Of a stretch of DNA of 64,000 nt, positions 31,523-53,998 are shown piece after piece (the first letter of the stretch is position 1; each line of letters begins with the position of its first letter). The position numbers and the translations under genes are program-made. The stretch is from assembly GCA_950097015.1 (NCBI GenBank), contig CATNEN010000041.1, positions 1,240,001 through 1,304,000 of the forward strand, written 5' to 3'. The notes under the pieces were generated by a model, which did no database searches, had not been told where the DNA came from, and saw only the letters and a list, made by a program, of their open reading frames with translations. This DNA is from Macrostomum hystrix. Taxonomy: Eukaryota > Animalia > Platyhelminthes.

Positions 31523-33547
31523 CGTGGCGTGGCTTTAAGAAGTCTTGCTTCCGATAGGGCACTGAGGCAGGTCGGAAGAGAAGTCCTTGTTTAAAAAATT
31601 TGATGCCTTCTAGCAGATGGATGCGCCTGTTGCTGTGGGCCATGCATATGATGTTTTGCCGATATTGTGAAACATGAAGCTTGCTCATTTAATTAGTAAG
31701 TGTCGAATTAATCCTATGTTAAACAAAATAATAAGGCCTACTCAAAATAATGAAATGATATTTTCAATTTGGTAGCTCTGCCTAAATACAAAATAGTTTC
31801 TAAAATAATTCTGTTTTTTGCAAAAAGAGATATTTTGTGGCAATAGAATGTAAAAACATTAATGACTTTGTATAGTGTGATCAATTAAATTTTGCAATAA
31901 AATGGAAATCTCTAATATATCATACTTGTTTCCAAAGTTAGACTACACCAAGCTAATAAAAAATCTTTTATCTTTCAGCTACCTTAAATTCCATTTGCAT
32001 TTAAGCAACATAACTCATATATAGCTAAAGAAAAGCAGAGTCAATTAACTATAACTGAGATATTGTAGATATTTATAATTTCTACAGATTTTTTATCTAG
32101 CTATTGTATAGGCTTACTTTTTTATTACAAATTTTATACATAACTGTTGTTACCTTTAGAATAGGTGTCTAAAGTGTCTATTTGTCAAGTTTGTTTTGGT
32201 GTTTATATGAACTGCTTTAGAAATTAGAACTATTAAATATAGAATTTGGTAAAAGATCATCATTTTGTTAAAATTATAGTCATGTTTAAGGCACACAGCA
32301 TATGTACAGGAAATAATAGCTTTTAAGCAATCCTTTGTTCTCCAATCCTCTACAATGCAAGAGTCAATCCCCACCTAAACTTGACTAATTAGAAAAGAGT
32401 TAATGTAGTAACCTATTATTATCCTTAGAGCTAGTCAGAGCTGTGGAGGTCTTGGTATATGGTGGTCTTAGTCAAGTGTAGATCATGCTAGGTACATTCC
32501 AGAAAAGTTTGAAAGGCTAAAGTGTATACTAAAGGTTTATTTTGTATGCCTGAAAGTTAAGAGAAGTTTAAAAAGTTGATAAATGGGCAGTGAAATAGTC
32601 ACTTTCTGAATTTTTGGTCATATACTAATTTACTACATAATGATGACTATAGCATACCAATTTTTGGCCTATATTTTATTAAAATACTTAGTAAATAGTA
32701 AAAGCTAAATCTATACCAGATAGGCTTATATAAATTTTGACAGGGTTCTGGCCTCTTTGTCTGCTAACAGACATGGAGTTGACTTCTTAGTAAGCAAGTG
32801 AAATTCATGAGTGCAGACAAGTGGTCAACTAGGCCTTAACAGAAATGAGAAGAAACTTATCACCTTGCAATCAGTACCATGCCAGTGTACATGTCAGTGT
32901 GTAGATAGAAGATCAGCTGACTTTCTTAGTTCTTTGAAAAATTTGAATGGATTTATACATAGGGCCTACTTTTAGTTTTGCATGCAGTAATGCCTTGCTA
33001 TGCAAGAGTGAGAGCATGAGCTTCCCTTCATGGGTATAATTAAACAATCCATAGGACCAACAACAATGTTTTTGTGACAATAAAAGTCAAAGTAGACAAC
33101 TTTGTTTCTATTGTCCTAATAGCAGATGAGTTTGTACAAAGTTTCATTTAAATACAAGTGAATAGCAGACGAGATGGTGGCAGACAAAAATACTGGAAAC
33201 TTTTTCTTATATTATTGAATTACTTAAGTTATACTATGACGAAGTTTCGGTTCCAACGAATAGGCGTAGCAGTTTCGGTTTATTTTAATAGTAAGGTAAA
33301 TTATCAATCGTTACAAAAACTTGGTAGCGGAAAGCACTCTCATGTAATAAATTGGGCCTTCGAAATAAGATATCGTCTTTACGGCGAATGCTGGCTATAT
33401 CTTAGATGGGTTACAGAGCTACTCAATGAATTTCACTTGAAATACAGCTACGGCTACAGTTCAAATTAGACACTGACAAAATAACAACCAGCACTCAGTC
33501 GTAGAACTAGTTACTAGCCCCAGGGAGAGGGAGCCTTCCTGGAAAGG

Positions 33548-34126
33548 CACCCGTATATACACGTTAGGCGGTATAGAACACGGCGAAAACCGCCTAAAAG
33601 GCGGTCCATATCATGCTATATGATATCGTAGCATGATATAGACCGCCTTTTTTAAGCGCATAAAGGCCTTTTATGGCACAAATTTGAACAGCCGTTTCTG
33701 CTAATTTTTTTAGTTCGCTAATGCAAAATATCTATTTTACTACTTTTTAGTAACAATAATTTTAGTGTCACTAGACAAATATTTGAATGGCTTAGTACAA
33801 GTGCTAACAGGTTATATTAATTTATGTAAGCCCAGGGCCTAGCTGTTTATTATTTTTTTATTTCCAAGTCATTGAAACATTAGACAGTCACAGCATTATG
33901 GTATATCTTACATATTAGTCCATTAGAACTCGAGAACAATAAGACTAAACTTTAAAAGTATGGCAGGAATAGGATGGCGCTCAGTTTTTAGCTAGGCCTA
34001 TCGCCGCCTATGCCCTAGTTTAATATAGAAATAATATAGTAAAGCTTAAAACCTATGCTAGCTGTATATTGAGCAGGCATAATAATTAGCTATTCTAGTA
34101 TACTATTGCCTAGCTGCTAGCTGTAG
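33548..34126 (+). repeat. Left TIR (579 bp) of the KDZ element
   Basis: Reverse complement of 51530-52108; no mismatch seen on spot-checking by eye. Confidence 0.95.
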
Positions 34127-34914
34127 AATGAGTGCCTTCTGCTCGACACACTGACAAGATAGCTGTCCTATCATCTATCATTTTACTGTGATTTTACTGT
34201 GATATCATTTTTTGTAATTTTCTTCTTTTCTTCCCATTTTTAAAAGCAAGTAGGGCCTAAACAAATTAAAATTTTCAGATTTTTTTTGCAATTAGTTAAC
34301 TAATACGGTGTCTTCTTGAAGTATATAAAAATATATTTCTATAATTGTTAGTGTGCTGTCCAGATAAGCAGGAAATTATTCCTACAGTACCATAGGAATA
34401 AGACAAAAAAATTTATTGCACTGTGGGGATAAGCACTGCCATAGAAAATTCTATATATAAGGGTCCCTAGTATGCTCAGCACACAATCATGGCACACTAA
34501 GGCCCCTGGGGCACAACAACAATAACAATAGCAAAGCACACCACAGTAGAACAGAGTACAGTTCTAAAAGGTGTACACTATATTTAATCACTGTTCACAT
34601 CATGACTATTTTCTTAGAAACAGTACAAAGAAACAGTTGGCAAAGAAGCATAGATGGCATACAGTTGGCCCAAAAATTGACCCCCAAATTTTTTCCTAGT
34701 GAAAACTATGCCATCTTTATTACTATGCTATGGGTCATAGTCAATCATGTACTATAAACTATAGTGATAACCAATATTCAAAATAAAATAGTACTGTTGT
34801 CTTTTGTATATAGTATATTATTAGTAATTTTATATATTTTATCACTTACATTAGATGCATCTTTCTTATAAACCTATATCATGCTTGCCTTCTATAAATC
34901 CTGCCAGCTATTAA

Positions 34915-35420
34915 ATACCCTGCTGGCCTTTTCTATATCCTGCTAGCATTTTTGACCCTGTTGGCCTTCCACATACCCTGATAATGTTTCCTATGCCCTA
35001 GCACCTATTCCTATGTCCTATTGGCCTTTCCTATACCCTGCTGGCACAATGAGTGCCTTATACCCTACTACTATTCCTTGATAGTCTTTCCCACACCCTG
35101 CTGGCCTTCCCCACACCCTGCTGGACTTCACCACACCTCGTGATGGCCTCTACTTCATTCTGCTGGTCATCCCTGCACCTTAATGGCCATTCCCACACCC
35201 TGGTGGCCTTTCCCACACCCTGGTGGCCTTCCCCACACCCTGCTGGCCTTTCCCACACCCTGCTTGCCTTCACCACACATTGATGGCCATCCACACACCT
35301 TGATGACCTTTCCCAAACCCTGGTGGTCTTCCCCATACCCTGATGGCCTATCCCTGATACAGTTAGCCTTCTCAATCTGGCCATCCACTTACCCGATGGC
35401 CTTTTGCACACCTTGGTGCT
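34915..35420. repeat. Left subterminal array of degenerate ~20-bp units (CTGGCCTTCCCCACACCCTG)
   Basis: The reverse complement of the unit matches right-hand units, e.g. CAGGGTGTGGGGAAGGCCA at ~49825. Confidence 0.85.
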
Positions 35421-35493
35421 CCAGGCGAATGTATGTATGCCACAACCTGGTCACTCACGGAAGCTTATTTTAATATATATTTCCATTATACTA

Positions 35494-36846
35494 CGGGTGT
35501 GTCATAAGTAATGTCACTGTGGTTGTTGTGCGGGAAACCAAAGCAATAATCATCCAAATATAATATATTCTGAAAGTACATTTATTGAGAAGTTGCCACC
35601 ACACCTGAGCAGCAATTTTAATGTCTATGGCCAAAACTGTTGCAAGAATGTGTTAATCAGATTTAGCAAGCGCAATGCGATGAAATCTTCTTTTTGCAAC
35701 GAGCAAAACTCAACATGAATCACGACAAGATGCACATCCAGTTCAACGCTTTCATTCGCTTCAAGCTTGGAAAATCTGCACTTGAAGTAGAGGAGGATCT
35801 CCGGAACACACTGCCAGACAACTGCCCAACTCGCAGGACAATTTACAGGTGGTTTCAGAACTTTACTGATCCTGGGTTCGAATTGGGAGATGCCGCCAGA
35901 TCTGGACGACCATGTTCAACCAGGACAATAGAGAACATCGAAGTCATCAGCGACCTGGTCAAGGAAGACCCGCGGCAGTCTGTCAGGGAGCTAGCGGACT
36001 GCTTGGAGATTGATTTCAAGACAGTCCATCATATCTTGACAGAGGATCTCCATCTCCGAAACGTCTGCTCGGTCTGGGTGCCCCATGACCTCACTGCGGA
36101 CCAACGTCAGGCCCGTGTGAACTGCGCCAATCAGATCCTCAAGGTGTTCAGCAGCCGGGGCTTGGATGACATCCTAAACTGCCTGGTTGTTGAGGATGAG
36201 ACCTGGCTCCACCTGGATGGCAAAAGCAGCAAGGCAGACAATCGCTGCTGGCTGGGAGCTGGGGACTCCAGGCTGACTGTGACCAGGAGGTCTATCTCAG
36301 ACAAGAAGACCATGCTGCTGGTGGCATTCACGCCAAACAAACGAGTCTCCATCTGTACAACTCCGCCAAACACCAAGGTCGATGGCCAGTACTTCATCGA
36401 CTTTGTCCGACACACTGGGAACCTCTGGCGCACGCTCCGGTCAAACCCGATTCACCTGAACGAAGTTCTGTGGCAGATGGACAACGCACGGCCCCACACC
36501 TGTCAGGCTGTTTCGGATTTTCTGGCTGGACGGCGAGTAAACCTGCTCTGGCAGAGTCCCTACAGCCCAGACTTCAACTTGTGCGACAGGTTTCTCTTTA
36601 AATGGCTAAGGCAGACTTTTCCCAGAGAAGTTTCGCAAACCATGATGAGGTCAAAGAAGCCGCGTTGCACTGGTTCCGACAGCTGGAGGAAAAACACCTG
36701 CAGGCTGAGGTAGAGAAGCTGTACGAGCACTGCCAGAGGGTGATTGATATTGGGGGACACTATGTTGTTGATTGATACAGTTTCGTTCATCTGCGATTGT
36801 TAGTTGGTCTGTTTTACCCTCAGTGACATTACTTATGACACACCCG
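35494..36846 (+). mobile_element. Mariner (DD34D) element nested in the KDZ element
   Basis: Perfect 26-bp TIRs CGGGTGTGTCATAAGTAATGTCACTG (35494-35519 and 36821-36846). TA on the left, AA on the right. Confidence 0.95.
35715..36775 (+). pseudogene. Mariner transposase with a single frameshift near 36620
   Basis: HTH, RSGRP, WVPHDL, EDETW, DNARPH and YSPDFNLCD (D34D spacing). The canonical C-terminus FANHDEVKEAALHWF..GGHYVVD lies in another frame. Confidence 0.9.
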
Positions 36847-37000
36847 AAGTATGACTACTATAAGTACTTATTATAAGCTATTAGATTACTATAACAAGTA
36901 ACCTAAGGAATTAGTCTAAAGGAAGACTTAGGACTTATCAATATAAGTCTCTAGATTTTTGCGCTATGTAAAAGCTGGTATTGGTTCTTTAAAATTTCAG

Positions 37001-39200
37001 ATGTCACGTTCTGCTAGAAGGCCTAGTGCTTGGAACGTATTTGAGCGAATTAATTACGATCCTAGTTTAAACGTTGTTGGTATGCATTTAATTCAGATTT
37101 AAATTTATTCAATCCACTCACTCAGATGCCACATTCAACATAAAATAGTTTAAGAAACAGTGTCACTTTAGCTCTCAAATTTTTTAATGCTTATGAGATC
37201 TTTAAGCTCGAATGGTAATCCTAAATTTCAGATCAAGTCAGCGGCCTTCGCGAGCGCTATGCTTTGCTTGACAAGCAGGGGAAGGAAGCCTTGCGTGCCC
37301 AAGCCGCAGAACGCACAGATACCGCCTCTTTTCAGCGGAAGAAGCTGGTTAGCATGGCTAACAGCATCGTAAGCAATAAAGTTCGAATGCATGCATTCAT
37401 GCACGTAGTATACTCCCTTAGGCAATTATGAACTTTGTTGCTAATCTCAATGTATGCCTTCACTACAAGGTCGAGTCAGCCGATAATGCAGGCTACCACG
37501 TTATCGTGCTGCTGCATTCCAAAGCTGAAGGTGCCACTACCGTGTATGAATCGCAGGAAGTCGTAGGCTTCTGTGAGCGAGCGAATGTCGCCTCAGTAAG
37601 TATCTCGTAAAATCGCAGGTACTTGTTTACTGACAGTATTCAAATAGATTTTTAATCTTAGTTATTAGGGTTTTATTATAGTTTTTGTTAAATACTCACA
37701 GTTTATCTAAAATCGAACATTTTTTTGGCTTTTCAATCGTGCGTGTCGTCTGCTTCTGCTTCTCGGCCTAAGACTGCGGCTACCTTGCGCATTGCTGTCA
37801 GCAATATGCTGCAGAACAAGTTTAGTAAGTACGGGCTGACAATCGCATGCCTGGGTCCTATTCGAAGCCACATCATCGTTTTTCCACTCGTATTAATTTC
37901 TGGTACTTTAACACGGACTCTCGTCCGTGTTAAAATGATTGCAAGGCTATGCTATGTTTGAGAATTACGAATATTACATTAGATAATTGCAACAACTGAA
38001 ATTCCGTTATATTAAGTTGCAAGTAAATCACGTACAAAATTATAAACATTGCTAGTTTCAATTATGCTCATAAACACGCTTTTATTTCTACTTTTAGAAA
38101 GAGCAATTGGCAGACGGCAGTTGCAATTTGGAAAAGTTGCACTGTACGGTCGATGGATTCACTGGCCGGTCGGAGTTCGAAGTGATATTCACCCACAAAA
38201 GCTCTCAAAAACAGAGCTTCAAAAAGTCTGGGATGCCAGGGCCCAAATAAAATTTGAAAAAAAGATCAGTGAAGTCACTTTCTACAGCGACTCACCACTT
38301 CAGCCGGGAACGAGCAGCGATCTACCTGTGCTGCCGGGAACGAGCAGCGACTCACCTGTGCTACCGGGAACGAACAGCGACTCACCTGTGCTACCGGGAA
38401 TGAGCAGGGACTCACATGCGTTAGTCCAAGTCGGTGGGACAGCTGTGCAACCGGTCAAAGTCGGCGGGACAGCTGTGCAACCGGTCAAAGTCGGTGGGAC
38501 AGCTGTGCAACCGGTCAAAGTCGGCGGGACAGCTGTGCAACCGGTCAAAGTCGGTGGGACAGCTGTGCAACCGGTCAAAGTCGGCGGGACAGCTGTGCAA
38601 CCGGTCAAAGTCGGCAGGACCGCTGTGCAACCGGTCAAAGTCGGCAGGACCGCTGTGCAACCGGTCAAAGTCGGCGGGACAGCTCCAGCTGTGCAACCGG
38701 TCAAAGTCGGCGGGACAGCTCCAGCTGTGCAACCGGTCAAAGTCGGCAGGACCGCTGTGCAACCGGTCAAAGTCGGCGGGACAGCTGTGCAACCGGTCAA
38801 AGTCGGTGGGACAGCTGTGCAACCGGTCAAAGTCGGTGGGACAGCTGTGCAACCGGTCAAAGTCGGTGGGACAGCTGTGCAACCGGTCAAAGTCGGTGGG
38901 ACAGCTGTGCAACCGGTCAAAGTCGGCGGGACAGCTGTGCAACCGGTCAAAGTCGGCGGGACAGCTGTGCAACCGGTCAAAGTCGGCGGGACAGCTGTGC
39001 AACCGGTCAAAGTCGGCGGGACAGCTGTGCAACCGGTCAAAGTCGGCGGGACAGCTGTGCAACCGGTCAAAGTCGGCGGGACAGCTGTGCAACCGGTCAA
39101 AGTCAGCGGGACAGCTGTGCAACCGATCAAAGTCGGCAGGACCGCTGTGCAACCGGTCCAGAGTAGCAGCCAAGAAACAATAGTAGTGGTGGATTATTAA
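37001..39200 (+). CDS. Transposon accessory gene with an HMG-box-like N-terminus and a repeat tail (~498 aa); exons 37001-37079, 37232-37368, 37470-37595, 37773-37824, 38098-39200
   Basis: GT-AG introns with consistent phases (1,0,0,1). RRPSAWNVF..LRERYALLDKQGKEALRAQAAE resembles HMG helices. The C-terminus is (GGTAVQPVKV)n. Confidence 0.65.
38425..39150 (+). repeat. 30-bp coding tandem repeat (GTCGGCGGGACAGCTGTGCAACCGGTCAAA)n
   Basis: About 24 units; length variants are in-frame 6-bp additions. Confidence 0.95.
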
Positions 39201-39289
39201 ATGAGTAATGAATAAACAGTTTTTTTAAAGCTACGGAAATCGATTTTCTACGATTATGTAACTGTAATCATCCTAAAGACCTAAACCCT

Positions 39290-40130
39290 CAAAAATGTTC
39301 TTGCGCAGTGAGACACTGCGCTCTGGTTGTTAGTTGATGCCTTCAGCGTACCATTCTTCACCTGGGTGTTTGCACCACGAAGCGAAATTACCAGCTTCTG
39401 GACCTAGAGAGCTGCCACCTCCAAATTCTGAGGGGACAGCTCTGGCGATGAGCAGTGTGATAAAGCTGTGGGACGGAACGCAGGTGTCTGCCTGCGCATT
39501 GTCCGAAGCTTTGTCATGGGCTAGCGCTGGTGGCATTATCAAGCCTCTTTTCCTTGATATCGACCTTCAGGTGGAGTAGGAGTTTACGGTGACCCCGCTT
39601 CTCAGGCAGCCACTCAATCAACAGCACTCCCAGCGAATCCAAAAGATGGCGCCCACCTGCTTCTTCATCTATGGTGTCGCCTTGTCCTTCAGTGGAGTGG
39701 GTTCAGCTGCGAAAATATCGACTTATCCCCTGTCACGACATAATAAACTCCTCTTGGCGGCATTGAATAATGTGAATCAGCTGCTGCGCCCTGTTGCGCT
39801 GCATCAGTGAAGTAAGGAGTTTCTGCACACATCTGGCAAAAACCTTCGATATTTTCAACTGAGCCGTAGGATGGGCTGTGCAGCCATAACTGATGCCACA
39901 GGCCTCTGCTATCTCAGCAACAGTCACTCAACTGTCCTCGTGGACGACACTGAGTGGTGGAGATCCTAAGTCTCCGACTGCGAGCTTCACCATCGAAGTC
40001 ACATTTGCCTCCATGGAAATGGTGAATCCAAGGGACACAATTTGTCTGTGTTTGAGGCAAGCCCCATGCGCTGAAAAAAGGCAGTGAAAGAACTTTTTGA
40101 TTGTCCCTCATAAGTCTAACCACGTATCTG
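39290..40130 (-). pseudogene. Degenerate second mariner-like transposase remnant
   Basis: Fragments WIHHFHGGKCDFDGEARSRR, VAEIAEACGISYG, KISKVFARCVQKLLT and WYAEGIN*QPER, with many stops and frameshifts. Confidence 0.75.
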
Positions 40131-42171
40131 TTAAGGATAATGATAACCTACGATTCAACGCTCCGTCCGGCATTTAAAATTTTATAAAGTATATCTATAG
40201 AACTTTTAACAGTAAAATTTTCGAATTTCGTAGCAGTGGTAAACAAACAATCAATTGAAAAGTTCAATGCAGCAAAATGATAAACCCCTCGTATAATCGA
40301 TTCCTTATGGAATCTCTTTTAGCTCAAGTGTTTGTTTCTGTTGGGATCACCGTACTTTCAGCCGGTAATTAAATTTCTGTGAATTATTTCACAGGAATCA
40401 CAGCCCTTTACTGTTTTACAACCTAGTTGACCTACAGCTGTTTCTTTACTGCATGCAATTCACGCTATTTAGTGTTGCCATTTCAGCTTCCATTGCTTCT
40501 TTTGTCCACCTTCTCAAAGTTTTATACAGATACCTTTTAAAACATACTTTTCTAACATAAATTTGCATTTTATACAGCCATTTATGTTATTTTTCAAAGA
40601 CTTTTGATATAATGAAGTCCCCTCAAATAATAGTAACGTTGATGCTAGTAATTAGTAAAATATATTTAATTACAAAAGTAATATAAAAAATACTTTATCC
40701 TTTGCTACTGTTATTTTTCATTGGAGCGATTTTGATATCGATCAGCGATTGGACGGTTCACTTGTTCGGACTTGTAATTATTTTTTTTAGTTTTCGAAAC
40801 ACGTGTTTGGGCTCTCGTTTTTGGAAACTTTAGGACCTCTGCAGGGCCAGCCAGTTGGCAAGCATTTAGGGGCTGCCGTGTTGGTGGCTCTACTGGTTGA
40901 TCTCAAAGTCATAGCTGAATAAGTGACCGCTATCGGGTTGTCTATGACCTGGCACACCAATCAGCACCAGGGGCGTAGCCAGGATTTTCGGTTAGGTAGC
41001 GCAAACGGCGCCAATTGTGTTTATAGGCGCTCAAGTGACGCCAAATCAGCGCCTATACGGCACCAAGTGGGTGCTGAAAAGGCACGAAAATCGGCGCTGA
41101 AAGTGCGCCAGCTGGAAGGAGAGCACCAAGCCTGCGTGAAGGGGGCGCTGCATACCTTTGCGGCAGTAGCTAATGTAAGAATCTGGCCCTCCACGCGTTA
41201 CTATGACTACTTAAATTCACTACAGTTTTTCATCATCGATCATACGAACACGAAATGGAGAAATACGCATGTACATCTATGTATACAGCTTCAATATATT
41301 TGAGATGGACAAGAAATCCTTCTCTGCGTTTTGCTAGCGGTGCAGCGGATTCCAGCGAATGGTCTGGACGTTGCGAACTCATCCAGAAACCTGTTCAGCC
41401 CACCTGATTTAGGGACGACCCCGCGGTGGGCCAGCCACCACACGCCTGCAGCAGTTACATTAGGTTAGCACCTCTGTTGCTTAGTAGCTCCTGCCATAAC
41501 GTCCCCAGCTAGTGTGCAGGAGCATCGATCCGGATCCCTCGCCCCTGCTGTCTTCGCGGCAGCTCTCGCCTGGCGCCCTCGCAGCTTCCGCTACACACCC
41601 ACCGACAACTCTGGCCATTATCCTTTATAAAGCGGGTATAATTTTCTTTTAATTTCTCAATTTAACTCAACTCTATTTCTACCTAAGAGACAAATCAATC
41701 GGACTCGGCAGTCGTAGTTTTCTTCCATATGGGTTCTCTTGAATGATTCGCTATAGAACGGGCCGGTAAAGACGGCTCGATCACAGTTCCGCTATCCTTA
41801 CTTGTAAACTACAACACAGACTGTGCCTCTGCTCCAAAAATGGATGGCTTTTTGCGCGCTTACTTGCTTAGTATTCAGTTGGCCTCAGCTAATTGGGCTA
41901 ATAAACAAAAATAATTTATAGAAACGTAAAAACTGACACGCGTCAAACATATATGATTTAGTCGTACTAAAAAAGTCACACAACGTGCAAGTAGTGAATG
42001 AGCTAAAGAATCGACTTTGTCAATGCGCCTCTATGCTTCCACTATGCGCCGTGTGTTAGTTTTGATAGTTGTTTTATCTGACTTGTATATTTGTCTGTCT
42101 GGTATGTCTGAAAGTTAAGGCAGCATTTTACTTTCAATTGCCTCGTGCATTTTAGTTTTTTGTCAATAAAA

Positions 42172-43387: not shown

Positions 43388-43549
43388 TACATGTATAACA
43401 GAATGGGGACAGAATGGGAAGGATGAAGGTGGCAGCGGTGTGACGGTGACAGAAAATGGTCATAACTTTTTTCTTCAAAAGATATTGAGCTCGGACCGCC
43501 TAGAATGAATTTCCCGTCCGAAAATTGTCTAGAAAACATTACGTTCCCG

Positions 43550-44067: not shown

Positions 44068-44118
44068 TGCACATCTGGCCCAATTGGGGCAGGTGAAATT
44101 TATTATTATTATTATTGT
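44068..44118 (+). mobile_element. 3' tail fragment of the SINE family
   Basis: GCACATCTGGCCCAATTGGGGCAGGTG followed by (ATT)n; same tail as at ~56920. Confidence 0.65.
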
Positions 44119-44870
44119 TATCAAGCTGCTGATTTTGCTTGTTTCTGTGAGGAAAACCACAAAAATCGAGTTTCTGGTGATCATCCATATATCTTATTAA
44201 TCTATGCTCAAATCACTAACTGTTCCTTAATGATTGGCTTGAGCACGAATCGAGTGTTATTGACTACTGCTAGTTCACGAATGCATGTACATGTACTTAA
44301 CTTTGCGTGTTTTATAAGAATTGAAAGTTCGCAAGCATGCGCATGGAATTTAAAACGTCAAGGATCGACATGTTCAGACCATTGACAATGCATAAAAATC
44401 AAATATAAAAATGTTGGTTGATAATTTTATTTATCATTTAAACAGAGACGCAGGATGGCAGATAAACATGCAAACATGTATAATTGGAAGTTTACTGAAG
44501 GCTGGATAAGCTTTAGTGAATTTATGCAGAATACTGTAGTACTCGTATTTACAAGTTCAAATGCCAGGAAAGCAAAAGTATAACACATTATTTGAAGCAC
44601 GACGCCAACTAATATGGTAGTAATAAGTACAAATATGGGATCAACTTGCAAAACTCGTCCTTACAAATTTTAATAGGCTAGTAAATAGGCTAGTTAAAGT
44701 TCTAAGTAAATCTAAAATGTTCATCTGAAAAACCGACTAACAACAAAAGCTACAGCTTTCTGTAAGTCCAACACTTTAATATCTTCTCCATTGGCCTATG
44801 CTAAAACTGAAAACATCTGCCGTTTAACAGATAGTGGAATGTCGTAAAAATCGAGCTGGCCATAGTCATA

Positions 44871-47800
44871 TTAGTACTGGCCGTCATCAACTTCGTCCTG
44901 GCCGTCATCAACTTCGCCCTGGCCGTCATCAACTTCGTCCTGGCCGTCATCAACTTCGTCCTGGCCCTCTTCATCTTCGTCCTGGCCGTCGTCATCTTCG
45001 TCCTGGCCGTCGTCATCTTCGTCCTGGCCGTCGTCATCTTCGTCCTGGCCGTCGTCATCTTCGTCCTGGCCGTCGTCATCTTCGCCGAGGCGAACCTCGT
45101 CCCTCTCCTGATTTGAACGCTGAACGGCTTTAAGAAAAAAAATTAAGAACGTAAATTTTGCAGTGCATTTTTACAGTTTGCAATAGATCAATAACGTTGT
45201 ACATACTGTTTAGTAACTAAACTGGGGAACCCCAGTTCTTGAATCAAAGCATTCAACCCTAACCCGCGAGTAAGCATATAGGGAAATTTATTCTGTCAAA
45301 GAACGCACTGGAAACCTAATCGCACAACAAGTGAAACAACGGCAATCTTACCAACGTAAATGCTGGTATGTGATAATACCGACGAAGAAAACACGGTGCT
45401 TTCTGACGGAAACGTCTGGATGTGGCGGTCAATCAGCCGTTGAATACCAAAGGCACGGAGAGCACGCAACGTGGCCTCTGGTCGGCCTGCTAACTGCGCA
45501 ACTTCTATTTGAGTTCGAAGCAGAGCAACGGCAAAAAAGTGGGATGCACGTCTGACTTCCTCACGAACCAGGCTAGCCTCTTCGTTGATTCGTTGATAAA
45601 GCTTTAATAGCTTGACCGCTTGTCGCTTGAGTGCGTGATCAGGCACTGCAGAAGTAGCGTCAGTGCAGGCGTTCCAAATGTTGGTCAATCTGATCATTCC
45701 AGTAGGATGACAATTCGCATTGTGCTCTTTGACTAGCTTCTCGCCCTTCGCAGTAAGTTTGTTAAGAGACCTGTTTAGCACTTTGTTGAGCTTTTGGCCA
45801 GCTGCAGTAGCTGCTTGTCGAATTAGAAACGCACGTTCACATGCTAGCTGCTGCAGCTTACCGAGAACAGCTTCTTTAGGCGTTCTCCTCGTTAGTCCAC
45901 GAGCGTCATTATCAGCGTAATGCAGCAGCTCCTGCTCCCAAACGCGACAGTTGCCGACGAACGATTCGATATCACCTGGTGAAAGTAAAGTAAATAAAGT
46001 AGATGCCTACACTAGCCATTATTATCCAGCGTGTGGACACATTTAGGGCTTACATTTTTCTTTGGATACGGGACAAAAACAAAAACGAATGCATTTAAAC
46101 ATTTACGACGCAAAAAAATATTAAATATTACATATTAAATGTAAAAAATAATATATTAAATATTAAATAATGCCTTTTTAATTAAAGTAGCTTATCCATA
46201 ATCATTGCTCACTATTCCCTCCAAAGTTACAATAGCTGACGTAGCAACTCAGTTTTCTTAATGTAGAACAGCCCTACTAGGCCATTGCAAACATGCAACA
46301 TACCGTCTAGTCCATTCTTTTGGCAGAATGATTGAACTTCCGATTGAAAACGCTTCAGGTTTTGCTCCTCTACCTTGGTTCGTTGAAAAAGCCAGACACC
46401 TATAAACAAATTTAGGAAGAAGTTAAAAAGTTATGACGAAAGAAATGATGAAAATGAACATACGCGAACAAATTCATGCATTAAATGAAGGCAGGCAGCT
46501 GAAAGAGGCCAACTGGTAAGGAAAGCCTTAGTAATTAAAAACTTTGTCCCTATAAAGAGATTACGATATTGTTTAGGAAAATGCTGCAAAGTATATGCGT
46601 ATACTTCATAGAATTTCGGACAACTCACTAATAGTATTAATGACGTTGAGATTGACGGAGCTCGCCCAATAGTTAAGGAATTCACGCCTGTTGACATGAG
46701 TCATTTCCTTTAACTGTGGCCCAAAGCGCCGTGACATAGACCAAAGCCGTTCGCAGCTTTCGCCATCAGTCAAGCCCACTCCGGATTGGTGTCGAATGCC
46801 AAACTTAGTTTGACAGGCCTCTTTGTGACCATATGAGTGAAAAGCTGGAATGGCGAAGCTGACTCTGGCATCACTGAAGTGACCAGCAAGCTTGCAACCG
46901 ATGTCATAAGAGACAACGAGCTTCTGGTCTTCTGGATGATCGTCCAGAAGCTTAGAAACCATGGCTTTAGAGTAGGCAAGCCTGAGAAACAATGAAAAAC
47001 CGATGCGCACTTTGTATTAGTAGTATATATAGAATTTGCATGAAATTATTTAAAAAGAACTTTTTCTAGTAAGAAAAAGATTTTCCAGAATGAAAGGAGA
47101 AAGAAAAGTAGATGGACATGTCTTTATAGAAGTATGTGTTGCAATCCTACCTTTCTCCTTTTGTCACGAGGTCGGAAAGATAAGAAACAGCAGAGTGCCG
47201 GCAGGATCCACAGAATAAGCCGAAAATGTCAAGCTTACTTTCGTCAGATGCAGTCGTAAGGTCTTTTCCACGACCTCCAGCAGTCCAATTGGGACAATAG
47301 GACTTGCTAGGGACTTCTGACGTTTGAAAGTCCACATCGACAAAATAGCCAGTGGATGGTGGAAGCACAGCTTTTCCAGCAAGCCTTCGGTGTCTGAAAC
47401 CGAAGCAGGCATCCAGCATCAAAAAGACAGGAATGGTTGGATTTCTACTGACAGAGAAGCAGCGCAGGGCATCTTCGACTTCAGTAGATGTAGCGGCACA
47501 ATTAGCGTCGTCGCCTAACTCGCTGCTGTTCATTTGTGTCTCCTGTATAGAAAGGGCAGGGCACAACCCTTAACAGTATGTTTCGTAACTGGTATAAAAA
47601 TATAATTATGAAATATATATATAAATATATTAATTATTATATTTTTCATTATAAAAATATAAGTATGTAGAAGATATAATTGACGAGTAAGATAAAATAA
47701 TAAAACCTTTACGATGAAGCACGAGGGGCATGTTGCTTTAGGGCCCCAGCGAATATACATCAAAAGCCGTCGAAACGCTCGAAAGCTGCTGGATGTGTTT

Positions 47801-49463
47801 AACGCACGGAAAATGTTGACCTAAAATAGACGGTTGTTAGATCACATTTTCTGACTAAGAACACTCTTTCAGGCGTCCATCATCAGGAAAATTGGACTGC
47901 TCTTTTCGGCATCAGAGTCCGAATCAACCTACAGAAGTTACATGACATTTTAATAAAAGCCAATCAGTGTATTGCAATGAGAGAGCATGGTTATACTCGT
48001 ACATATATGAAAGGAAGATCTTTTACCACATAGCATGCTGGACATGATGGCTTTCTTCCCCAACGAAAGCTCTGCAGCACACGGCGGAAAGACCGGAACG
48101 CCCCAGTTACGTTGAGCGCTCTAAATAGATCGATCTAAAAATTTAATGTATGAGAATGGCTGATTGTTAAGACACACCTATTACAAAATAATAGCAAGTT
48201 GGGCCAGTCTGATGAAAACTTGCTGATGTGGATGACTGCGCCCACATAGACTTCTTGGAGCGCCTAATAGCACTGCAAATCGAAAACAACGATGCTGTGC
48301 AGTTGCAATTCAGCGAATCAATTAGAAGAAGCAGTTCAATAGACACGGCAGTCAGTTCCCGAGAGCCCTCTGGTCGAGGCTGCAAGGGCCAAAATCCATG
48401 TGCCAGAAGAGCTGCGTGGTACGTAGTACATGTACACATCTCAAGATTTGCTTTTAGTTCGCTTCCTGAAATGAGGTAGTGAGTACTGATACTGATTGAG
48501 TAAAGTCTTGCTAGAATATCAGTGTCCCCTAAATATGACGTTTGTTTTTGTAGCAATCGGCGTCATATTGCAGCTCAGAACATTCACGTGACTTGTTATT
48601 TTAAGAAGCTAAGTAACAAAGTAAGCTACTGCAAACAGAAAAAATGCTGAATTCAGCCGAGAATCACCATCTTCAGTCACAATAGTGACCGGAAGTACGC
48701 TGTAGAGAAGACAGCTGCACAGCCGAGAAAGCCGCACTTGTGATGAAACGGCCTCAAAGAAGTCACCCTGACGAGCGGGTAAAAAAGAGCACTGTCGCTA
48801 GAAATCATATATAAGAAAATACCCAATTCATGTAAAAATGCATTCAATACAATATATAATATATATATCATAATACAATATAAACAACATAATTATAAAC
48901 CAGATCTGCATAGTATCGAACTTACATTCCAGCGTTGAACAGCATGGGGCGGCATATGGGCATGGCGGGCATCTAAGCAAGTGGAGCAGACCGATAGTAA
49001 GTGACACTTGAGGCACCGGAATATTTCAGTCTCGCAACCGCAAAAGACACATGGGCGCTTGTTGTAGTGACCCGCTAAACCGACTGTCAAGACCCCTGAC
49101 TGAAATAACTCATTCCAAGCGTCGTTTTCTTCGCTGCAAAAGGTCTTAAAACGGCTTGGCTTTGCGGACTTCGATTGAGCACGATCGTCATGAGTCTCGA
49201 CTTCTTCAGCAACGATAGGGTCGTCTTGGATGTCCAACCATTCTTCTTCTTCTGGGTCGTTGTTGTATACAGGCTGGGTGTCACTGCATAGAAAGAAAGA
49301 GTAGTCAAGAAAAGTTGTGAATCATTTGAATTTTGAACCATTATACTCACGGGATGCAACACTTCGATGTCAACGGAGTTCGAACGATACGTGCTCGCTT
49401 ACGACACGCAGGAGTACAATACTTTACTGACGTCTTGGCAATAGACTGCTTTCGTCTTCCCAT
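44871..49463 (-). CDS. CxC-KDZ transposase (~890 aa); exons 49463-49351, 49283-48926, 48767-48668, 48465-48185, 47820-47713, 47542-47151, 46981-46629, 46399-46304, 45975-45352, 45127-44871
   Basis: CxC cluster CVFC..FRCLKC..CSTC..H..PPH..RWNGDFF; CTC..LLAHGFWP..TAVSIELL; CPSC. Catalytic-core motifs MLDACF, GLFCGSCRH, KGER, YDIGC, PAFHSYGH..CQ and GLTDGESCERLWS. The frame stays open across all junctions. The exon 4 donor is the least certain. Confidence 0.88.
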
Positions 49464-49719
49464 GTAGCTGAAATCAGATAAGCAAATAGTGTCGGATAAT
49501 CGGATAAATATTTGATGATTACTAATTTTCAAAGACAATAAAAGAATCAAAACAAAACGTATCCATAAAGCAGGTCGAAGCGAAGATTGCTTTAACAAAA
49601 TAAAAGATAAGCGTCCAAGACTCACCCGGGTGTAGTCTGTTGCCTCGAGAAACGGGTATGTAAAGAAGAGAATCAGAAGGCAGGAAGGCACCAAAGTGAA
49701 AGAAAAGGCAGTAGAATTT

Positions 49720-51345
49720 GGAAAAGGCTAGCGTTGTGAGGGGAAGGCCAGCGTAGTGTGGGAAAGGCCAGCGTAGTGTGGGAAAGGCCAGCGTAGTGTG
49801 GGGAAGGCCATTAGGATGTGGCAGCAGGGTGTGGGGAAGGCCATCTGGGTGTGGGAAAGGCCAAAGAGGTGTGGGAAAGGCCACAGAGGTGTGGGAAAGG
49901 CCACAGAGGTGTGGGAAAGGCCACAGAGGTGTGGGAAAGGCCAGCGTAGTATGGGGAAGGCCAGCGCAGTGTGGGAAGGCCAGCGTAGTATGGGAAAGGC
50001 CATTAGGATGTGGCAGCAGGGTGTGGGGAAGGCCACCTGGGTGTGGGAAAGGCCATCAATATGGGGAAGCCCACATAGGAATGAATAAGGTCAGTAGGGT
50101 GTTGTGAAGGCCAAAAATGTGTGGGAAAGGCCACAGAGGTGTGGGAAAGGCCAGCGTAGTGTGGCGAAGGCCAGCGTTGGGTAAGGAAGGCCAGCGTAGT
50201 GTGGGGAAGGGCAGCGTAGTGTGGCGAAGGCCAGCGTTGGGTAAGGAAGGCCAGCGTAATGTGGGGAAGGCCATTAGTATGTGGCAGCAGGGTGTGGGAA
50301 GGCCACCTGGGTGTGGGAAAGGCCATCAATATGGGGAAGCCCACATAGGAATGAAGAAGGCCAGTAGGGTGTTGTGAAAGCCAAAAATGTGTTGGAAAGG
50401 CCACCTGGGTATGGGAAATGCCACAGAGGTGTGGGAAAGGCCATCAAGGTATGGGGAAGGCCACATAGGAGTGGAGAAAGCCACATAGGAGTTAAAAGGC
50501 TAGTAGGGTGTTGTAAAGGCCATTAAGGTGTGGGGAAGGCCATAAAAGTGTAGGAAAATCCATCCAGGTGGGGAAGGACACAAAGGAGTAGAGAAGGCCA
50601 ATAGGGCATGGTGAAGGCCAGTAAGGTATGGTGAAGGCCAGTAAGGTATGGTGAAGGCCAGTAGGGTATGGTGAAGGCCAGTAGGGTATGGTGAAGGCCA
50701 GTAGGGTATGTTGAAGGCCAGTAGGGTATGGTAAAGGCCAGTAGGGTATGGTGAAGGCCAGTAGGGTATGGTGAAGGCCAGTAGGGTATGGTGAAGGCCA
50801 GTAGGGTATGGTGAAGGCCAGTAGGGTATGAAGGCTAGTAGGGTATGGTGAAGGCCAGTAGGGTATGGTGAAGGCCAGTAGGGTATGGTGAAGGCCAGTA
50901 GGGTATGGTGAAGGCCAGTAGGGTATGGTGAAGGCCAGTAGGGTATGGTGAAGGCCAGTAGGGTATGGTGAAGGCCAGTAGGGTATGGTGAAGGCCAGTA
51001 GGGTATGGTGAAGGCCAGTAGGGTATGGTGAAGGCCAGTAGGGTATGGTGAAGGCCAGTAGGGTATGGTGAAGGCCAGTAAGGTATGGTGAAGGCCAGTA
51101 GGGTATGGTGAAGGCCAGTAGGGTATGGTGAAGGCCAGTAAGGTATGGTGAAGGCCAGTAAGGTATGGTGAAGGCCAGTAGGGTATGGTGAAGGCCAGTA
51201 GGGTATGGTGAAGGCCAGTAGGGTATGGTGAAGGCCAGTAGGGTATGGTGAAGGCCAGTAGGGTATGGTGAATGCCAGTAGGGTATGGTGAAGGCCAGTA
51301 GGGTATGGTGAAGGCCAGTAGGGTATGGGGAAGGCCATCAAAGTG
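49720..51345. repeat. Right subterminal array: degenerate GGGAAAGGCCA units, then a homogeneous 20-bp (GGTGAAGGCCAGTAGGGTAT)n block
   Basis: Seen directly; inverted relative to the left array. Confidence 0.93.
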
Positions 51346-51529
51346 TGGCAAAAGCCACAAAGGAGTGGAGTGGTAACAAGTAAAGCCTCTGAAGCAACAA
51401 TTGGCTTTAACCTACAACACAACATAGTAGTAGAATAGCTAGAACCTAATTATAAACTTAGGCCTATAATTACAAACAATACACATATTTATGCCAGCAA
51501 CTAGTTATACAATTTAGCTAGCTACAGGC

Positions 51530-52108
51530 CTACAGCTAGCAGCTAGGCAATAGTATACTAGAATAGCTAATTATTATGCCTGCTCAATATACAGCTAGCA
51601 TAGGTTTTAAGCTTTACTATATTATTTCTATATTAAACTAGGGCATAGGCGGCGATAGGCCTAGCTAAAAACTGAGCGCCATCCTATTCCTGCCATACTT
51701 TTAAAGTTTAGTCTTATTGTTCTCGAGTTCTAATGGACTAATATGTAAGATATACCATAATGCTGTGACTGTCTAATGTTTCAATGACTTGGAAATAAAA
51801 AAATAATAAACAGCTAGGCCCTGGGCTTACATAAATTAATATAACCTGTTAGCACTTGTACTAAGCCATTCAAATATTTGTCTAGTGACACTAAAATTAT
51901 TGTTACTAAAAAGTAGTAAAATAGATATTTTGCATTAGCGAACTAAAAAAATTAGCAGAAACGGCTGTTCAAATTTGTGCCATAAAAGGCCTTTATGCGC
52001 TTAAAAAAGGCGGTCTATATCATGCTACGATATCATATAGCATGATATGGACCGCCTTTTAGGCGGTTTTCGCCGTGTTCTATACCGCCTAACGTGTATA
52101 TACGGGTG
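51530..52108 (-). repeat. Right TIR (579 bp) of the KDZ element
   Basis: Reverse complement of 33548-34126. Confidence 0.95.
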
Positions 52109-53998
52109 GGAAAGGCCTAATTAGCATATTTGAATGCGAACTACGACTGTGTAGTACACTAAAACAAAACCATTATAAATATTAATGAAAAACTGAAGAA
52201 ATATCCCTAACAAATATAGCTAACAAAAATAATGCACATAATTCTAACTAGCATATTAAATTACATTTAATTAGAGAGACAACACCACAATACCCATTTG
52301 GTGGTTCTAAAAGTTTTTTTCAGAATACAAAAGTTTGACAGTAAAAAAACTACCAGCAGAGTAGCAGTTTAAAGTTTAAGTTGGTATACTGATATAGATA
52401 TAAGCTAGTAAAATTAATCTGAGCCTCCCAAAAAATTGTGAGCAGAAATATTGGATGTAGCCAAGTAAGTAAGTTGTACACTATCAAAGCAAAAAATGTT
52501 GAAAATTGTTTTTATGAACTAAAAATTTAGACTACCGTTATGCAAATTCATTCCATGTAAAAAAACACTTCAAGCATATTAAAAAAATTCTGTGTCAAAA
52601 TCAAATTTAAAAAAATTAATGGCGCTAAACATCAGTTTCTAGGACGAATTCAAACAGTCGATCGTCTTTAGCTTGGTACCAATTCAAACCAAGGAGTAGA
52701 TTCGACTAGGAGTAGATTCAAACAGGCCCAGTTTTTCTCCTGTGTCCATGATTTAGTAACAGCTACGATAAATTCAGGTGTGATTAGCAAACGATTCGGT
52801 GTGATTGTGTGACGGCTTTTTTATCGTGCTAAAAACGATTAATTGACGCATTGTTCACTCAAGGACCACTATTGGAGTAGTCTACGCGCGCTATTGTTAA
52901 AAAATGAAATCAAAATTATTGTTTCAATAAAAGGGTAGAATGCACGAATAATTTCAATAAATAATAAGATACTACAAGGCATGAAGGTTTTTAATAAATA
53001 GTAAGAATAGTAAGGATTGGTCGGCCGTAGCAGTAAATTAAGGCACTTTTATCTGTGAAAGAAATGAGTCAGAAATTACAGGTAACGCATTTGGGCCAGA
53101 TGTACTGCCAGCGGCACAGCCGCCTGTGCCATTTAGGGGCGCCTCTTAAGGCTGCGTACAGCTTTTCAGTCCGTGGACTTGGGAGGCCACCACCACCCAC
53201 ATTTCTACCTGATGCTGGTATACCAGTTTTTTACAACTAGGCACACTGAAGCCAAGGACCACTAGGAGTAGTGCTACTCTTAGTTCTAATCCTAGTGGTC
53301 CTTGACTGAAGCACTAGTAGCCATGTATCTTGCTTCAGGACTAAAATCGTTTTCCTTCGGCTAAGATTCGAACTTCCGAACTCTACTTCACAAGTCCGAA
53401 GCTCTAAGCACTGTTTATACAAGGTCTGGTATACGAGCTTAGTAAGTGTAATTTGTATTATTGTTGCATGAGCTGATTTACAATGTTAAAGTGTTCGTGA
53501 AGATAAATTTTAAACGGAAACACAGGTCTCTAATATTAGACAGGAATCGGAGATTCCAGAATCTTATGTGATCCTGTAACTCTTCATATTTTCATGTCTG
53601 TGGGGTTTGCACTTTAGAATAAATATAAAAAATTTACAATTTTTTATTTTGAAAGTGATTTTTTAAAAGGTATTCAGAGAAGTGGACAGTCACATGCAGG
53701 CATATATTGTGAGAATAAGGCAGCTGTAAAGCCCTGCAAATTAGCTAAATGAGACGGAAACTGTCGTTGGCGCAGGGCAATAATCAGAATGTGAGATAAA
53801 TCCACTTAAAACGATTGGCAACTGAGTAAAAATTCGAATTGGAAGAAAAACATGAGCAGTAAAGTCTAGCTTGCTTGATACTTTGTTCAATGGATGTCAA
53901 AAAATCAACAGCCTAAATATCCAATAACAAGTTATAGCAATAAATAATAGCTAGGTGACGTCCTGGCATCATTTTTTTTCGTTGACATAAAAGGTGGC

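What the first reader, a model, noticed from the sequence alone, without database searches (positions are those of the whole stretch)
33541..52115. Complete, recently inserted 18.6-kb KDZ-class transposon with 579-bp TIRs, a 7-bp TSD and two convergent spliced genes
Seen: 579-bp TIRs with no mismatch found by eye, GGAAAGG duplicated at both ends, inverted subterminal arrays, a 10-exon open transposase gene with all KDZ core motifs, and a convergent 5-exon accessory gene. Established: KDZ transposases are best described in fungi (often with TET/JBP and HMG cargo) and as fish Zisupton (8-bp TSD). Inference: this is a potentially active, foldback-like animal KDZ lineage with an atypical TSD length. 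The ORF track shows only fragments of it.
Basis: partly seen in the sequence, partly recalled or inferred. Interest (0 to 1): 0.88.

Follow-up and report, generated by a model that had tools for sequence, protein, structure and literature searches.

The report
Complete two-gene KDZ transposon in flatworm
This is a complete, apparently young 18.6-kb cut-and-paste jumping gene of the KDZ class in a flatworm-type genome, with both of its genes still open; it is a well-preserved new example of a known kind, not a new kind of element.

Summary
Two 579-nt arms (33548-34126, 51530-52108) are 100% complementary. GGAAAGG flanks both ends, and 20-bp repeat arrays lie in inverted orientation inside each arm.

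On the minus strand, a homology-guided 10-exon model gives an open 880-aa KDZ transposase. Pfam KDZ scores 97 bits on one exon. All 40 strongly conserved core columns are kept. The protein is 53% identical to a Macrostomum lignano protein.

On the plus strand, a 5-exon, 514-aa accessory gene is open. A homologue lies convergent to KDZ genes at two M. lignano loci. No HMM supports an HMG box in it.

A 7-bp TSD with CA..TG termini is what Kojima 2025 reports for fungal Kyakuja. "Foldback-like" is also not apt, because the arms make up only 6% of the element.

A separate 9.9-kb M. lignano KDZ element has 249-nt TIRs, the same terminal CACCCGT and a 6-bp TSD.

The interior holds a nested mariner and other transposon debris. 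The transposase gene has an internal exon-cassette duplication with a stop-bearing pseudo-exon, so autonomy is not proven.

Run word shares suggest spliced RNA. Read mapping failed, so the splicing, copy number and empty site are untested.

The scan has noted other KDZ loci in this genome. Verdict: new member of a known kind.

The parts
33541..33547 (.). Left target-site duplication, GGAAAGG
   Evidence: Read directly. Identical to 52109-52115.
33548..34126 (+). Left terminal inverted repeat, 579 nt, starting CACCCGT. It contains a 56-nt hairpin at 33596-33651.
   Evidence: 100% complementary to the right arm. (palindrome). (DNA fold z = -6.15).
34875..35354 (-). Left subterminal array of about 20-bp units with core GG(A/G)AAGGCC on the minus strand
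   Evidence: period 20, 13 copies. (I2-I25 pair it with the right arrays). (5 core motifs, all on the minus strand).
35491..36849 (+). Nested mariner-type element with TA duplication (35489-90 and 36850-51) and 32-35-nt TIRs. The transposase ORF 35694-36713 has an apparent frameshift near its C-terminus.
   Evidence: TIRs and TA. (DDE_3, HTH_48 Mos1, HTH_32). (overlapping C-terminal frame 36602-36775). (84-88% nt identity to M. lignano copies).
37001..39200 (+). Accessory gene. Five exons: 37001-37079, 37232-37368, 37422-37595, 37773-37824, 38098-39200. The product is 514 aa, with a conserved motif of about 50 aa followed by a (GGTAVQPVKV)n tail encoded by the 30-bp array 38424-39158.
   Evidence: open frame, all introns GT-AG. 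(homologous convergent gene with the same exon phases next to M. lignano KDZ genes). (no Pfam hit).
39201..44870 (.). Spacer between the two convergent genes. It holds decayed transposon fragments: a weak reverse-transcriptase piece at 43153-43395, a Tc1-like DDE tail at 43504-43860, and mariner-like helix-turn-helix remains near 39736-39927 on the minus strand.
   Evidence: RVT_1 21.7 bits, DDE_3 19 bits, both below the curated cut-offs. (ORF fragments).
44871..49463 (-). KDZ transposase gene, 10 exons: 49463-49351, 49283-48926, 48767-48668, 48465-48224, one of 48134-48027 or 47820-47713, 47542-47151, 46981-46629, 46399-46304, 45975-45352, 45127-44871. The product is 880 aa. The acidic C-terminal tail is encoded by the 21-bp array 44856-45084.
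   Evidence: model, open frame, splice sites; 53% identity to P0151 over 739 columns. (KDZ PF18758: 97.2 and 24.1 bits, covering profile positions 3-215 of 217). (40 of 40 conserved columns kept). (sister to M. lignano P0151).
47869..47928 (-). Stop-bearing pseudo-exon or alternative exon, part of an internal duplicated cassette (48134-47869 duplicated as 47820-onward). If spliced in, the product ends at 326 aa, before the catalytic core.
   Evidence: (M. lignano relatives have a single copy of this exon).
49719..51337 (+). Right subterminal arrays of 20-bp units: 49719-50557 with core GTGGGAAAGGCC, and 50593-51337 with 37 copies at 96% match
51530..52108 (-). Right terminal inverted repeat, 579 nt, ending ACGGGTG
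52109..52115 (.). Right target-site duplication, GGAAAGG. With the last 3 nt of the TIR and the next 2 nt of flank it forms GTGGGAAAGGCC, the core of the element's own subterminal repeat.

Best explanation
This is one insertion of an autonomous-type class II (cut-and-paste) transposon of the KDZ superfamily. It is 18,561 bp long (33548-52108) and sits in the genome of a flatworm close to Macrostomum lignano.

Shown:
- Perfect 579-nt TIRs with CA..TG termini.
- A 7-bp target duplication.
- Inverted subterminal 20-bp repeat arrays.
- An open 880-aa CxC-KDZ transposase gene with every strongly conserved core residue.
- An open 514-aa accessory gene whose homologue accompanies KDZ genes in M. lignano in the same convergent arrangement.

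Inferred mechanism: the transposase binds the ends, probably through its N-terminal Cys/His cluster and the subterminal 20-bp repeats, and possibly helped by the accessory protein. It pairs the TIRs, excises the element and integrates it with a 7-bp staggered cut.

By TSD length and termini the element resembles the Kyakuja branch of KDZ rather than Zisupton or Dileera.

Zero differences in 2 x 579 nt and an intact TSD put the insertion, or the last homogenisation of the arms, within roughly 0.3% neutral divergence. The nested mariner and the debris between the genes are passengers.
For: - TIRs 100% over 579 nt. TSD and termini read directly.
- KDZ PF18758 at 97.2 bits against a cut-off of 26.6. 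Two adjacent exons cover profile positions 3-215 of 217.
- A 10-exon model with canonical splice sites is open for 880 aa and 53% identical to M. lignano PAA55188.1.
- 40 of 40 columns conserved at 85% or more in 44 homologous cores are retained, including D351, D464, E512/E515 and the Cys/His set.
- The protein is sister to M. lignano P0151, SH-aLRT 94.
- The accessory gene is open. It is conserved, with the same exon phases and convergent position, beside two different M. lignano KDZ lineages.
- An independent M. lignano element, L004 6646-16569, has 249-nt TIRs at 99%, the same terminal CACCCGT and a flanking CTCATT duplication.
- Literature: Kyakuja has a 7-bp TSD and CA..TG termini (PMC12730594). 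Large KDZ elements with 139-241-bp TIRs and extra ORFs are experimentally mobile in Cryptococcus (bioRxiv 10.1101/2024.08.15.608186 and 10.1101/2025.05.19.654958).
- Expression, indirect: seven runs of the same organism hold 0.48-0.63 of the words of the gene region, where the exonic fraction is about 0.55-0.58. Four of them (X2-X5, 0.57-0.63) fall below the 0.10 listing floor on a stretch that is 85% intron.
Against: - No read-level support was obtained for the junctions, copy number, empty allele or splicing (one search failed).
- The transposase gene carries a diverged internal cassette duplication with a stop-bearing pseudo-exon. A full-length product therefore depends on untested splicing.
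- The copy holds a nested mariner and about 5.6 kb of transposon debris. That fits age, or carriage by the family.
- TIR identity could be kept by gene conversion between the arms rather than by youth.
- CxC1 scores below the Pfam cut-off (21.6 against 26.9 bits).
- The clade was not placed against labelled Kyakuja, Dileera or Zisupton references.
- Transcripts could come from other copies.
Confidence: 0.8

Rival explanations
1. The copy is structurally complete but no longer autonomous. The cassette duplication with its stop-bearing exon, or the nested insertions, have disabled the transposase. The copy either moved with enzyme supplied by other copies or is immobile, and its identical arms are kept alike by gene conversion.
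For: The pseudo-exon 47928-47869 has a good acceptor and ends in TGA, which truncates the product at 326 aa before the catalytic core. The duplication is absent from M. lignano relatives. The element holds a nested mariner and transposon debris. Earlier notes report several other KDZ loci in this genome that could supply enzyme.
Against: The two duplicated exons are only about 58% identical at the protein level (by eye, sequences), yet both remain open with canonical splice sites. The pseudo-exon has no donor site before its stop, so it is likely skipped. All conserved residues are kept over 880 aa. Word shares fit a spliced RNA.
Confidence: 0.14
2. The pair is a domesticated host gene pair (KDZ-derived gene plus partner) that happens to lie between old repeats, not a mobile element.
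For: The KDZ-plus-accessory pairing is conserved between species. No flanking TIRs were seen within 10 kb at three M. lignano loci.
Against: Perfect 579-nt TIRs abut a 7-bp direct duplication. The same terminal heptamer and a TSD occur on an independent M. lignano element. The M. lignano loci were too short to include both expected ends. Many diverged KDZ copies in one genome fit a transposon family.
Confidence: 0.03
3. The inverted arms are an assembly artefact, a false inverted duplication.
For: The arms are exactly identical, and no read check was possible.
Against: Each arm is joined to different unique sequence on both sides. A 7-bp TSD flanks the whole. The interior is asymmetric and has the gene order seen in M. 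lignano. The arms share their terminal heptamer with another species' element.
Confidence: 0.03

Closest known systems
Kyakuja DNA transposons of Agaricomycete fungi (Kyakuja-1_LB and Kyakuja-2_LB; Kojima 2025, PMC12730594)
   Same: KDZ-domain transposase, 7-bp target duplication, 5'-CA..TG-3' termini, more than one gene carried.
   Different: The fungal families are described as having no TIRs and many carry a TET/JBP dioxygenase. This element has 579-nt perfect TIRs, no TET/JBP gene, an animal host, intron-rich genes and a different accessory gene. Clade membership of the transposase was not tested against labelled references.
Cryptococcus KDZ1, KDZ2 and KDZ3 (Dileera clade; bioRxiv 10.1101/2024.08.15.608186 and 10.1101/2025.05.19.654958)
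   Same: Large size (9-11 kb), long TIRs (139-241 bp), a CxC-KDZ transposase plus extra ORFs of unknown function. Those elements are shown to move.
   Different: Their TSDs are 8 bp (4-8 for KDZ2 and KDZ3) and their CxC1 domain is strong. This element is almost twice as long, its CxC match is sub-threshold, and its mobility is not shown.
Zisupton of fish (Bohne et al. 2012, as cited in PMC12730594 and PMC9297572) and Zisupton-like elements of Pristionchus
   Same: Animal host, multi-exon KDZ-superfamily transposase, TIRs.
   Different: Zisupton makes 8-bp TSDs. The canonical protein has CxC4 and SWIM domains and is much longer (up to about 1400 aa). Neither domain was detected here. No fish protein was among the 18 of the 150 nearest relatives whose source names were looked up; the other 132 were not named, so fish relatives are not excluded.
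Macrostomum lignano KDZ loci (PAA55188.1, PAA87534.1, PAA89046.1; assembly GCA_002269645.1)
   Same: Closest proteins (53% identity for PAA55188.1). The same convergent accessory gene lies beside two of them. One complete 9.9-kb element has 249-nt TIRs and the same CACCCGT terminus.
   Different: They are annotated only as hypothetical proteins and are not described as transposons in the papers searched. The complete M. lignano element has no accessory gene and a 6-bp duplication.

Membership tests
KDZ transposon superfamily | KDZ transposase domain (Pfam PF18758) above the curated cut-off | tested here: met
   Exon 46981-46629 scores 97.2 bits against a cut-off of 26.6. The adjacent exon scores 24.1 bits. 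Together they cover profile positions 3-215 of 217.
KDZ transposon superfamily | Conserved acidic and Cys/His core residues retained | tested here: met
   40 of 40 columns conserved at 85% or more in 44 homologues are kept.
KDZ transposon superfamily | N-terminal CxC zinc-chelating cluster | tested here: inconclusive
   CxC1 scores 21.6 bits on one exon, below the 26.9 cut-off. The flatworm relatives also score nothing at E < 0.01, while mollusc, lancelet and urchin relatives hit CxC1/CxC2. The Cys pattern aligns with P0151.
KDZ transposon superfamily | Terminal inverted repeats and a target-site duplication around the gene | tested here: met
Kyakuja | 7-bp target-site duplication | tested here: met
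   GGAAAGG on both sides with symmetric termini. Only one insertion was seen. A related M. lignano element shows 6 bp.
Kyakuja | 5'-CA..TG-3' termini | tested here: met
   CACCCG...CGGGTG.
Kyakuja | No TIRs, as described for the fungal reference families | tested here: not met
   579-nt perfect TIRs.
Kyakuja | Transposase falls in the Kyakuja clade of the KDZ tree | not testable with these tools
   No labelled Kyakuja, Dileera or Zisupton reference sequences could be fetched. The tree of available relatives only shows a flatworm clade among invertebrate sequences.
Zisupton | 8-bp target-site duplication | tested here: not met
   7 bp. An 8-bp reading (GGAAAGGC) requires asymmetric ends.
Zisupton | CxC4 plus SWIM domains with the KDZ core | tested here: not met
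   No such Pfam hits on the five larger transposase exons scanned as ORF pieces (the three short exons and the tail exon were not scanned) or on five full-length relatives.
HMG-box protein (accessory gene) | HMG_box profile match | tested here: not met
   No Pfam family at E <= 10 for exons 1, 2, 3 and 5 scanned separately. No PDB sequence match for exon 2. The called M. lignano homologue in L003 has no Pfam hit on record. The spliced N-terminus could not be scanned as one piece, so a divergent box is not excluded.
GTF2I-repeat fold (accessory gene, conserved 50-aa motif) | Structural match to GTF2I domains | tested here: inconclusive
   The AlphaFold2 model has mean pLDDT 63, and 80-86 over residues 20-50. 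Seven of ten Foldseek hits are GTF2I domains at E about 1-8. VIA-align Z is 4.4-5.4 over 53 residues. GTF2IRD1 and GTF2IRD2 are among the top 5 AFDB Swiss-Prot hits (ranks 1, 3 and 5). A profile search of PDB sequences finds none.
Foldback elements | Inverted arms make up most of the element | tested here: not met
   The arms are 1,158 of 18,561 nt.

The most novel reading that the evidence does not exclude
The element chooses targets through its own end-binding motif. The 9-mer GGAAAGGCC, the core of the subterminal 20-bp repeats, sits exactly at the insertion site, so that the right junction recreates the 12-mer repeat core. If the CxC domain or the conserved accessory protein (which has a possible GTF2I-like DNA-binding fold and a lineage-specific tandem-repeat tail) tethers the transposition complex to such motifs, this would be a motif-directed homing system in an animal cut-and-paste transposon.
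Probability: 0.12. Interest if true: 0.7.

Novelty: new member of a known kind. Interest (0 to 1): 0.45.

Why it matters
KDZ is one of the least studied superfamilies of eukaryotic DNA transposons. Mobility has been shown only in fungi, and only Zisupton was well characterised structurally before 2025.

This window gives a fully delimited animal element with exact ends, TSD, candidate binding repeats, an intact-looking transposase and a conserved partner gene. It comes from a genus (Macrostomum) in which, to my knowledge, transgenesis is possible; this was not checked in the papers read here.

That makes three things directly testable: KDZ transposition biochemistry, the role of the accessory protein, and target choice. 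It could also yield a large-cargo vector.

It extends the Kyakuja-like signature (7 bp, CA..TG) from fungi to animals. It also shows that M. lignano proteins filed as 'hypothetical' belong to two-gene transposons.

Tried and rejected
No splice joints, depth or loose ends were obtained.
- Protein word searches found nothing with the last large transposase exon or with the accessory last exon.
- The search with P0151 found no protein annotated from this genome.
- The ESM Atlas gave only weak chromo-like leads for the accessory motif, score 0.65. I set these aside.
- Pfam found nothing on the accessory exons.
- Iyer et al. 2014 could not be read. The CxC-to-clade mapping and the 'HMG cargo' statement therefore could not be checked. 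No held paper contains both 'Kyakuja' and 'HMG'.
- Three M. lignano loci (L001-L003) showed no flanking TIRs. Their inverted repeats are mariner copies, and the loci are too short to hold both expected ends.
- Similarity of the 160-bp empty site to the arrays beyond the 9-mer is at chance level: 11% of controls score as well. Insertion into a decayed array is therefore not supported.
- Rfam found no RNA family in the element.
- No Pfam family reached its curated cut-off on the nine flanking ORFs scanned; one had a weak MIF4G match (17.4 bits, cut-off 30.8), and there is no similarity between the two flanks.


Full report
**1. Observation**

The repeat finder reports arms 33548-34126 and 51530-52108, 579 nt and 100% complementary, with 17,403 nt between them. 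The ends read directly are ...CCTTCCT GGAAAGG | CACCCGTATATAC... on the left and ...GTATATACGGGTG | GGAAAGG CCTAATT... on the right.

The element proper is therefore 33548-52108 (18,561 bp). Its termini are 5'-CA..TG-3', and it is flanked by a 7-bp direct duplication. Because the base after the right duplication is C, an 8-bp reading (GGAAAGGC) is possible, but only if the two ends are unequal.

Tandem Repeats Finder and the inverted-repeat list show arrays of about 20-bp units at 34875-35354 and at 49719-51337, in opposite orientation. No other copy or fragment lies elsewhere in the window. Each arm contains a 56-nt hairpin 49 nt from the tip.

**2. The transposase gene**

Pfam places the KDZ domain (PF18758) on two neighbouring minus-strand ORF pieces. 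They score 97.2 and 24.1 bits and cover profile positions 102-215 and 3-98 of 217. A sub-threshold CxC1 match (21.6 bits) lies further upstream.

An exhaustive HMMER search with the best exon found 1,625 relatives. The closest are from Macrostomum lignano. Next come molluscs, lancelet, sea urchin and basidiomycete fungi.

I used the M. lignano protein PAA55188.1 (P0151) as a guide and enumerated in-frame GT/GC-AG junctions. This gave ten exons: 49463-49351, 49283-48926, 48767-48668, 48465-48224, one of 48134-48027 or 47820-47713, 47542-47151, 46981-46629, 46399-46304, 45975-45352 and 45127-44871.

- The frame is open for 880 aa.
- Eight introns are GT-AG. One is GC-AG with the GCAAGT donor.
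- Identity to P0151 is 53% over 739 aligned columns.
- In an alignment of 44 homologous cores, all 40 columns conserved at 85% or more are kept in the window protein. These include D351, D464, E512/E515 and the Cys/His positions.
- In a quick maximum-likelihood tree the protein is sister to P0151, SH-aLRT 94, among flatworm sequences.
- The acidic C-terminal tail is encoded by the 21-bp tandem array 44856-45084.

There is one complication. Exon 5 and the start of exon 6 are duplicated in tandem. The first copy of the exon-6 start (47928-47869) runs into a TGA.

- Using either copy of exon 5, or both, keeps the frame open (880 or 916 aa).
- Splicing in the stop-bearing piece gives a 326-aa protein without the catalytic core.
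- M. lignano relatives have one copy of this exon, so the duplication is specific to this lineage.

Which form is made is untested.

**3. The accessory gene**

On the plus strand, five exons (37001-37079, 37232-37368, 37422-37595, 37773-37824, 38098-39200) give an open 514-aa product. All introns are GT-AG. The long (GGTAVQPVKV)n tail is encoded by the 30-bp array 38424-39158.

tblastx and tblastn against M. lignano loci fetched around KDZ genes found a homologue on the opposite strand, 8-9 kb downstream of the KDZ gene. It is present in two different KDZ lineages, L001 (P0151) and L003 (P0007).

- In L001 the start exon, the intron phases and the last-exon motif correspond exon by exon.
- The three last exons share a motif of about 50 aa with 11 invariant positions (W..WP..V..D..P..L...L...I.F). 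Each is followed by a different tandem-repeat tail.

So the two-gene, convergent layout is a conserved feature of this flatworm KDZ group.

- No accessory exon matches any Pfam family even at E = 10.
- Exon 2 matches no PDB sequence.
- The called M. lignano homologue has no Pfam hit on record.
- An AlphaFold2 model of the motif has mean pLDDT 63, and 80-86 over residues 20-50. It resembles GTF2I repeat domains most: seven of ten Foldseek hits, VIA-align Z 4.4-5.4, and GTF2IRD1 and GTF2IRD2 among the top 5 in Swiss-Prot models (ranks 1, 3 and 5).
- These scores are in the range the tool calls common, and a profile search of PDB sequences gives no support.

I treat the GTF2I resemblance as a lead only.

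**4. The rest of the interior**

A mariner-type element lies at 35491-36849. It has a TA duplication, 32-35-nt TIRs, and an ORF hitting DDE_3 and the Mos1 HTH, with an apparent C-terminal frameshift. Copies 84-88% identical occur in M. lignano.

The 5.6 kb between the two genes holds weak reverse-transcriptase and Tc1-like pieces and mariner-like remains. No TET/JBP-like ORF and no Rfam family were found.

**5. Independent check of the ends**

A fourth M. lignano locus (L004, around PAA89046.1) contains a complete 9,924-bp element at 6646-16569. It has 249-nt TIRs at 99%, the same terminal heptamer CACCCGT, and CTCATT directly repeated on both sides.

This supports the boundaries called here and the CA..TG rule. 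It also shows that duplication length is not fixed at 7: it is 6 bp there, or 7 if the terminal C is counted with the flank.

**6. Expression (indirect)**

Seven runs of the same coded organism hold 0.48-0.63 of the sampled words of 45200-49400, where my exons make up 0.55-0.58.

On 45976-46628, which is 85% intron, the source DNA run holds 1.00. Four of those runs (X2-X5), which held 0.57-0.63 before, are not among the listed holders, where the lowest listed share is 0.10. Two other runs of that organism hold 0.18 and 0.40.

This fits spliced RNA with some unspliced precursor. It is not a read-level demonstration, and other copies could be the source.

DNA runs of a second organism hold 0.33 of the intron-rich stretch. 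A very similar element therefore exists in a related species. I could not tell whether this reflects close kinship or transfer.

**7. Comparison with known families**

- Kojima 2025 (PMC12730594) reports that Zisupton and Dileera make 8-bp TSDs. Fungal Kyakuja make 7-bp TSDs, end in CA..TG and lack TIRs.
- Cryptococcus KDZ1-3 are 9-11 kb, have 139-241-bp TIRs, a CxC1-KDZ transposase and extra ORFs, and move in the laboratory (bioRxiv 10.1101/2024.08.15.608186 and 10.1101/2025.05.19.654958).
- Zisupton-type elements are known in fish and nematodes (PMC9297572).

The present element thus combines Kyakuja-like ends with long TIRs of the kind seen in Cryptococcus KDZ, in an animal. I found no paper linking KDZ or Zisupton with Macrostomum. 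I could not place the protein against labelled clade references.

**8. An unexplained detail**

The 12-mer GTGGGAAAGGCC occurs 15 times in the window. Fourteen are in the subterminal arrays. One lies exactly across the right junction (52106-52117), where 0.00 are expected by chance.

Its 9-mer core occurs only twice outside the element in 45 kb, and one of these is the target site. Similarity of the empty site to the arrays does not extend beyond the 9-mer.

After allowing for the many motifs one could have compared, I put this at roughly p = 0.01-0.05. It is worth testing on other copies, but it is not a finding.

**9. Verdict**

This is a real, complete and probably young KDZ transposon. It is Kyakuja-like in its ends and carries a conserved accessory gene. 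Autonomy and current activity are plausible but unproven.

It is a new member of a known kind. The scan's earlier notes list several further KDZ loci in this genome, including another with an apparent 7-bp TSD and others with a convergent partner gene. I did not test those.

Noticed in passing
window 35491-36849: Nested mariner-type element with TA duplication, 32-35-nt TIRs and a Mos1-like ORF that appears frameshifted near the C-terminus. Copies 84-88% identical lie in M. lignano loci L002 and L003. The M. lignano model P0005 fuses a KDZ fragment to the antisense translation of such a mariner.
   Followed up: partly
window 52106-52117 and the arrays 35205-35256 and 49758-50442: The right junction recreates GTGGGAAAGGCC, the core of the element's own subterminal repeat. 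The 9-mer core is otherwise almost absent outside the element. This may reflect motif-directed target choice, or coincidence.
   Followed up: partly
window 47713-48134: Diverged tandem duplication of a transposase exon plus the start of the next exon. The first copy ends in a stop (47928-47869). The duplication is absent from M. lignano relatives. It could give mutually exclusive exons or a truncated N-terminal protein.
   Followed up: partly
window 36989-37003 and 49463-49475; L001 about 23900-23925: Both start codons, and that of the M. lignano accessory homologue, are preceded within 0-9 nt by a pyrimidine-rich ...tttcag acceptor-like site. This could mean spliced-leader trans-splicing or an upstream non-coding exon.
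   Followed up: no
window 38424-39158; L001 22026-22800; L003 27862-28800: The accessory proteins of three KDZ lineages all end in long tandem-repeat tails, but the repeat unit is different in each (10, 15 and 16 residues).
   Followed up: partly
window 44856-45084: A 21-bp tandem array encodes the acidic (EDDDGQD)n C-terminal tail of the transposase. The M. lignano relative also ends in an acidic, non-repetitive tail.
   Followed up: partly
L004 6646-16569 (M. lignano NIVC01000166.1): Complete single-gene 9.9-kb KDZ element with 249-nt TIRs (99%), terminal CACCCGT and a CTCATT duplication. In the public record its protein is annotated only as hypothetical.
   Followed up: partly
window 45976-46628 (run search): DNA runs of a second coded organism hold a third of the words of this mostly intronic stretch, more than their share over the whole gene (0.17-0.18). 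A near-identical element exists in a related species, through either close kinship or horizontal transfer.
   Followed up: no
window 33596-33651 and 52005-52060: Each TIR carries a 56-nt near-perfect palindrome 49 nt from the tip. Its DNA fold is far more stable than shuffled controls (z = -6.15).
   Followed up: partly
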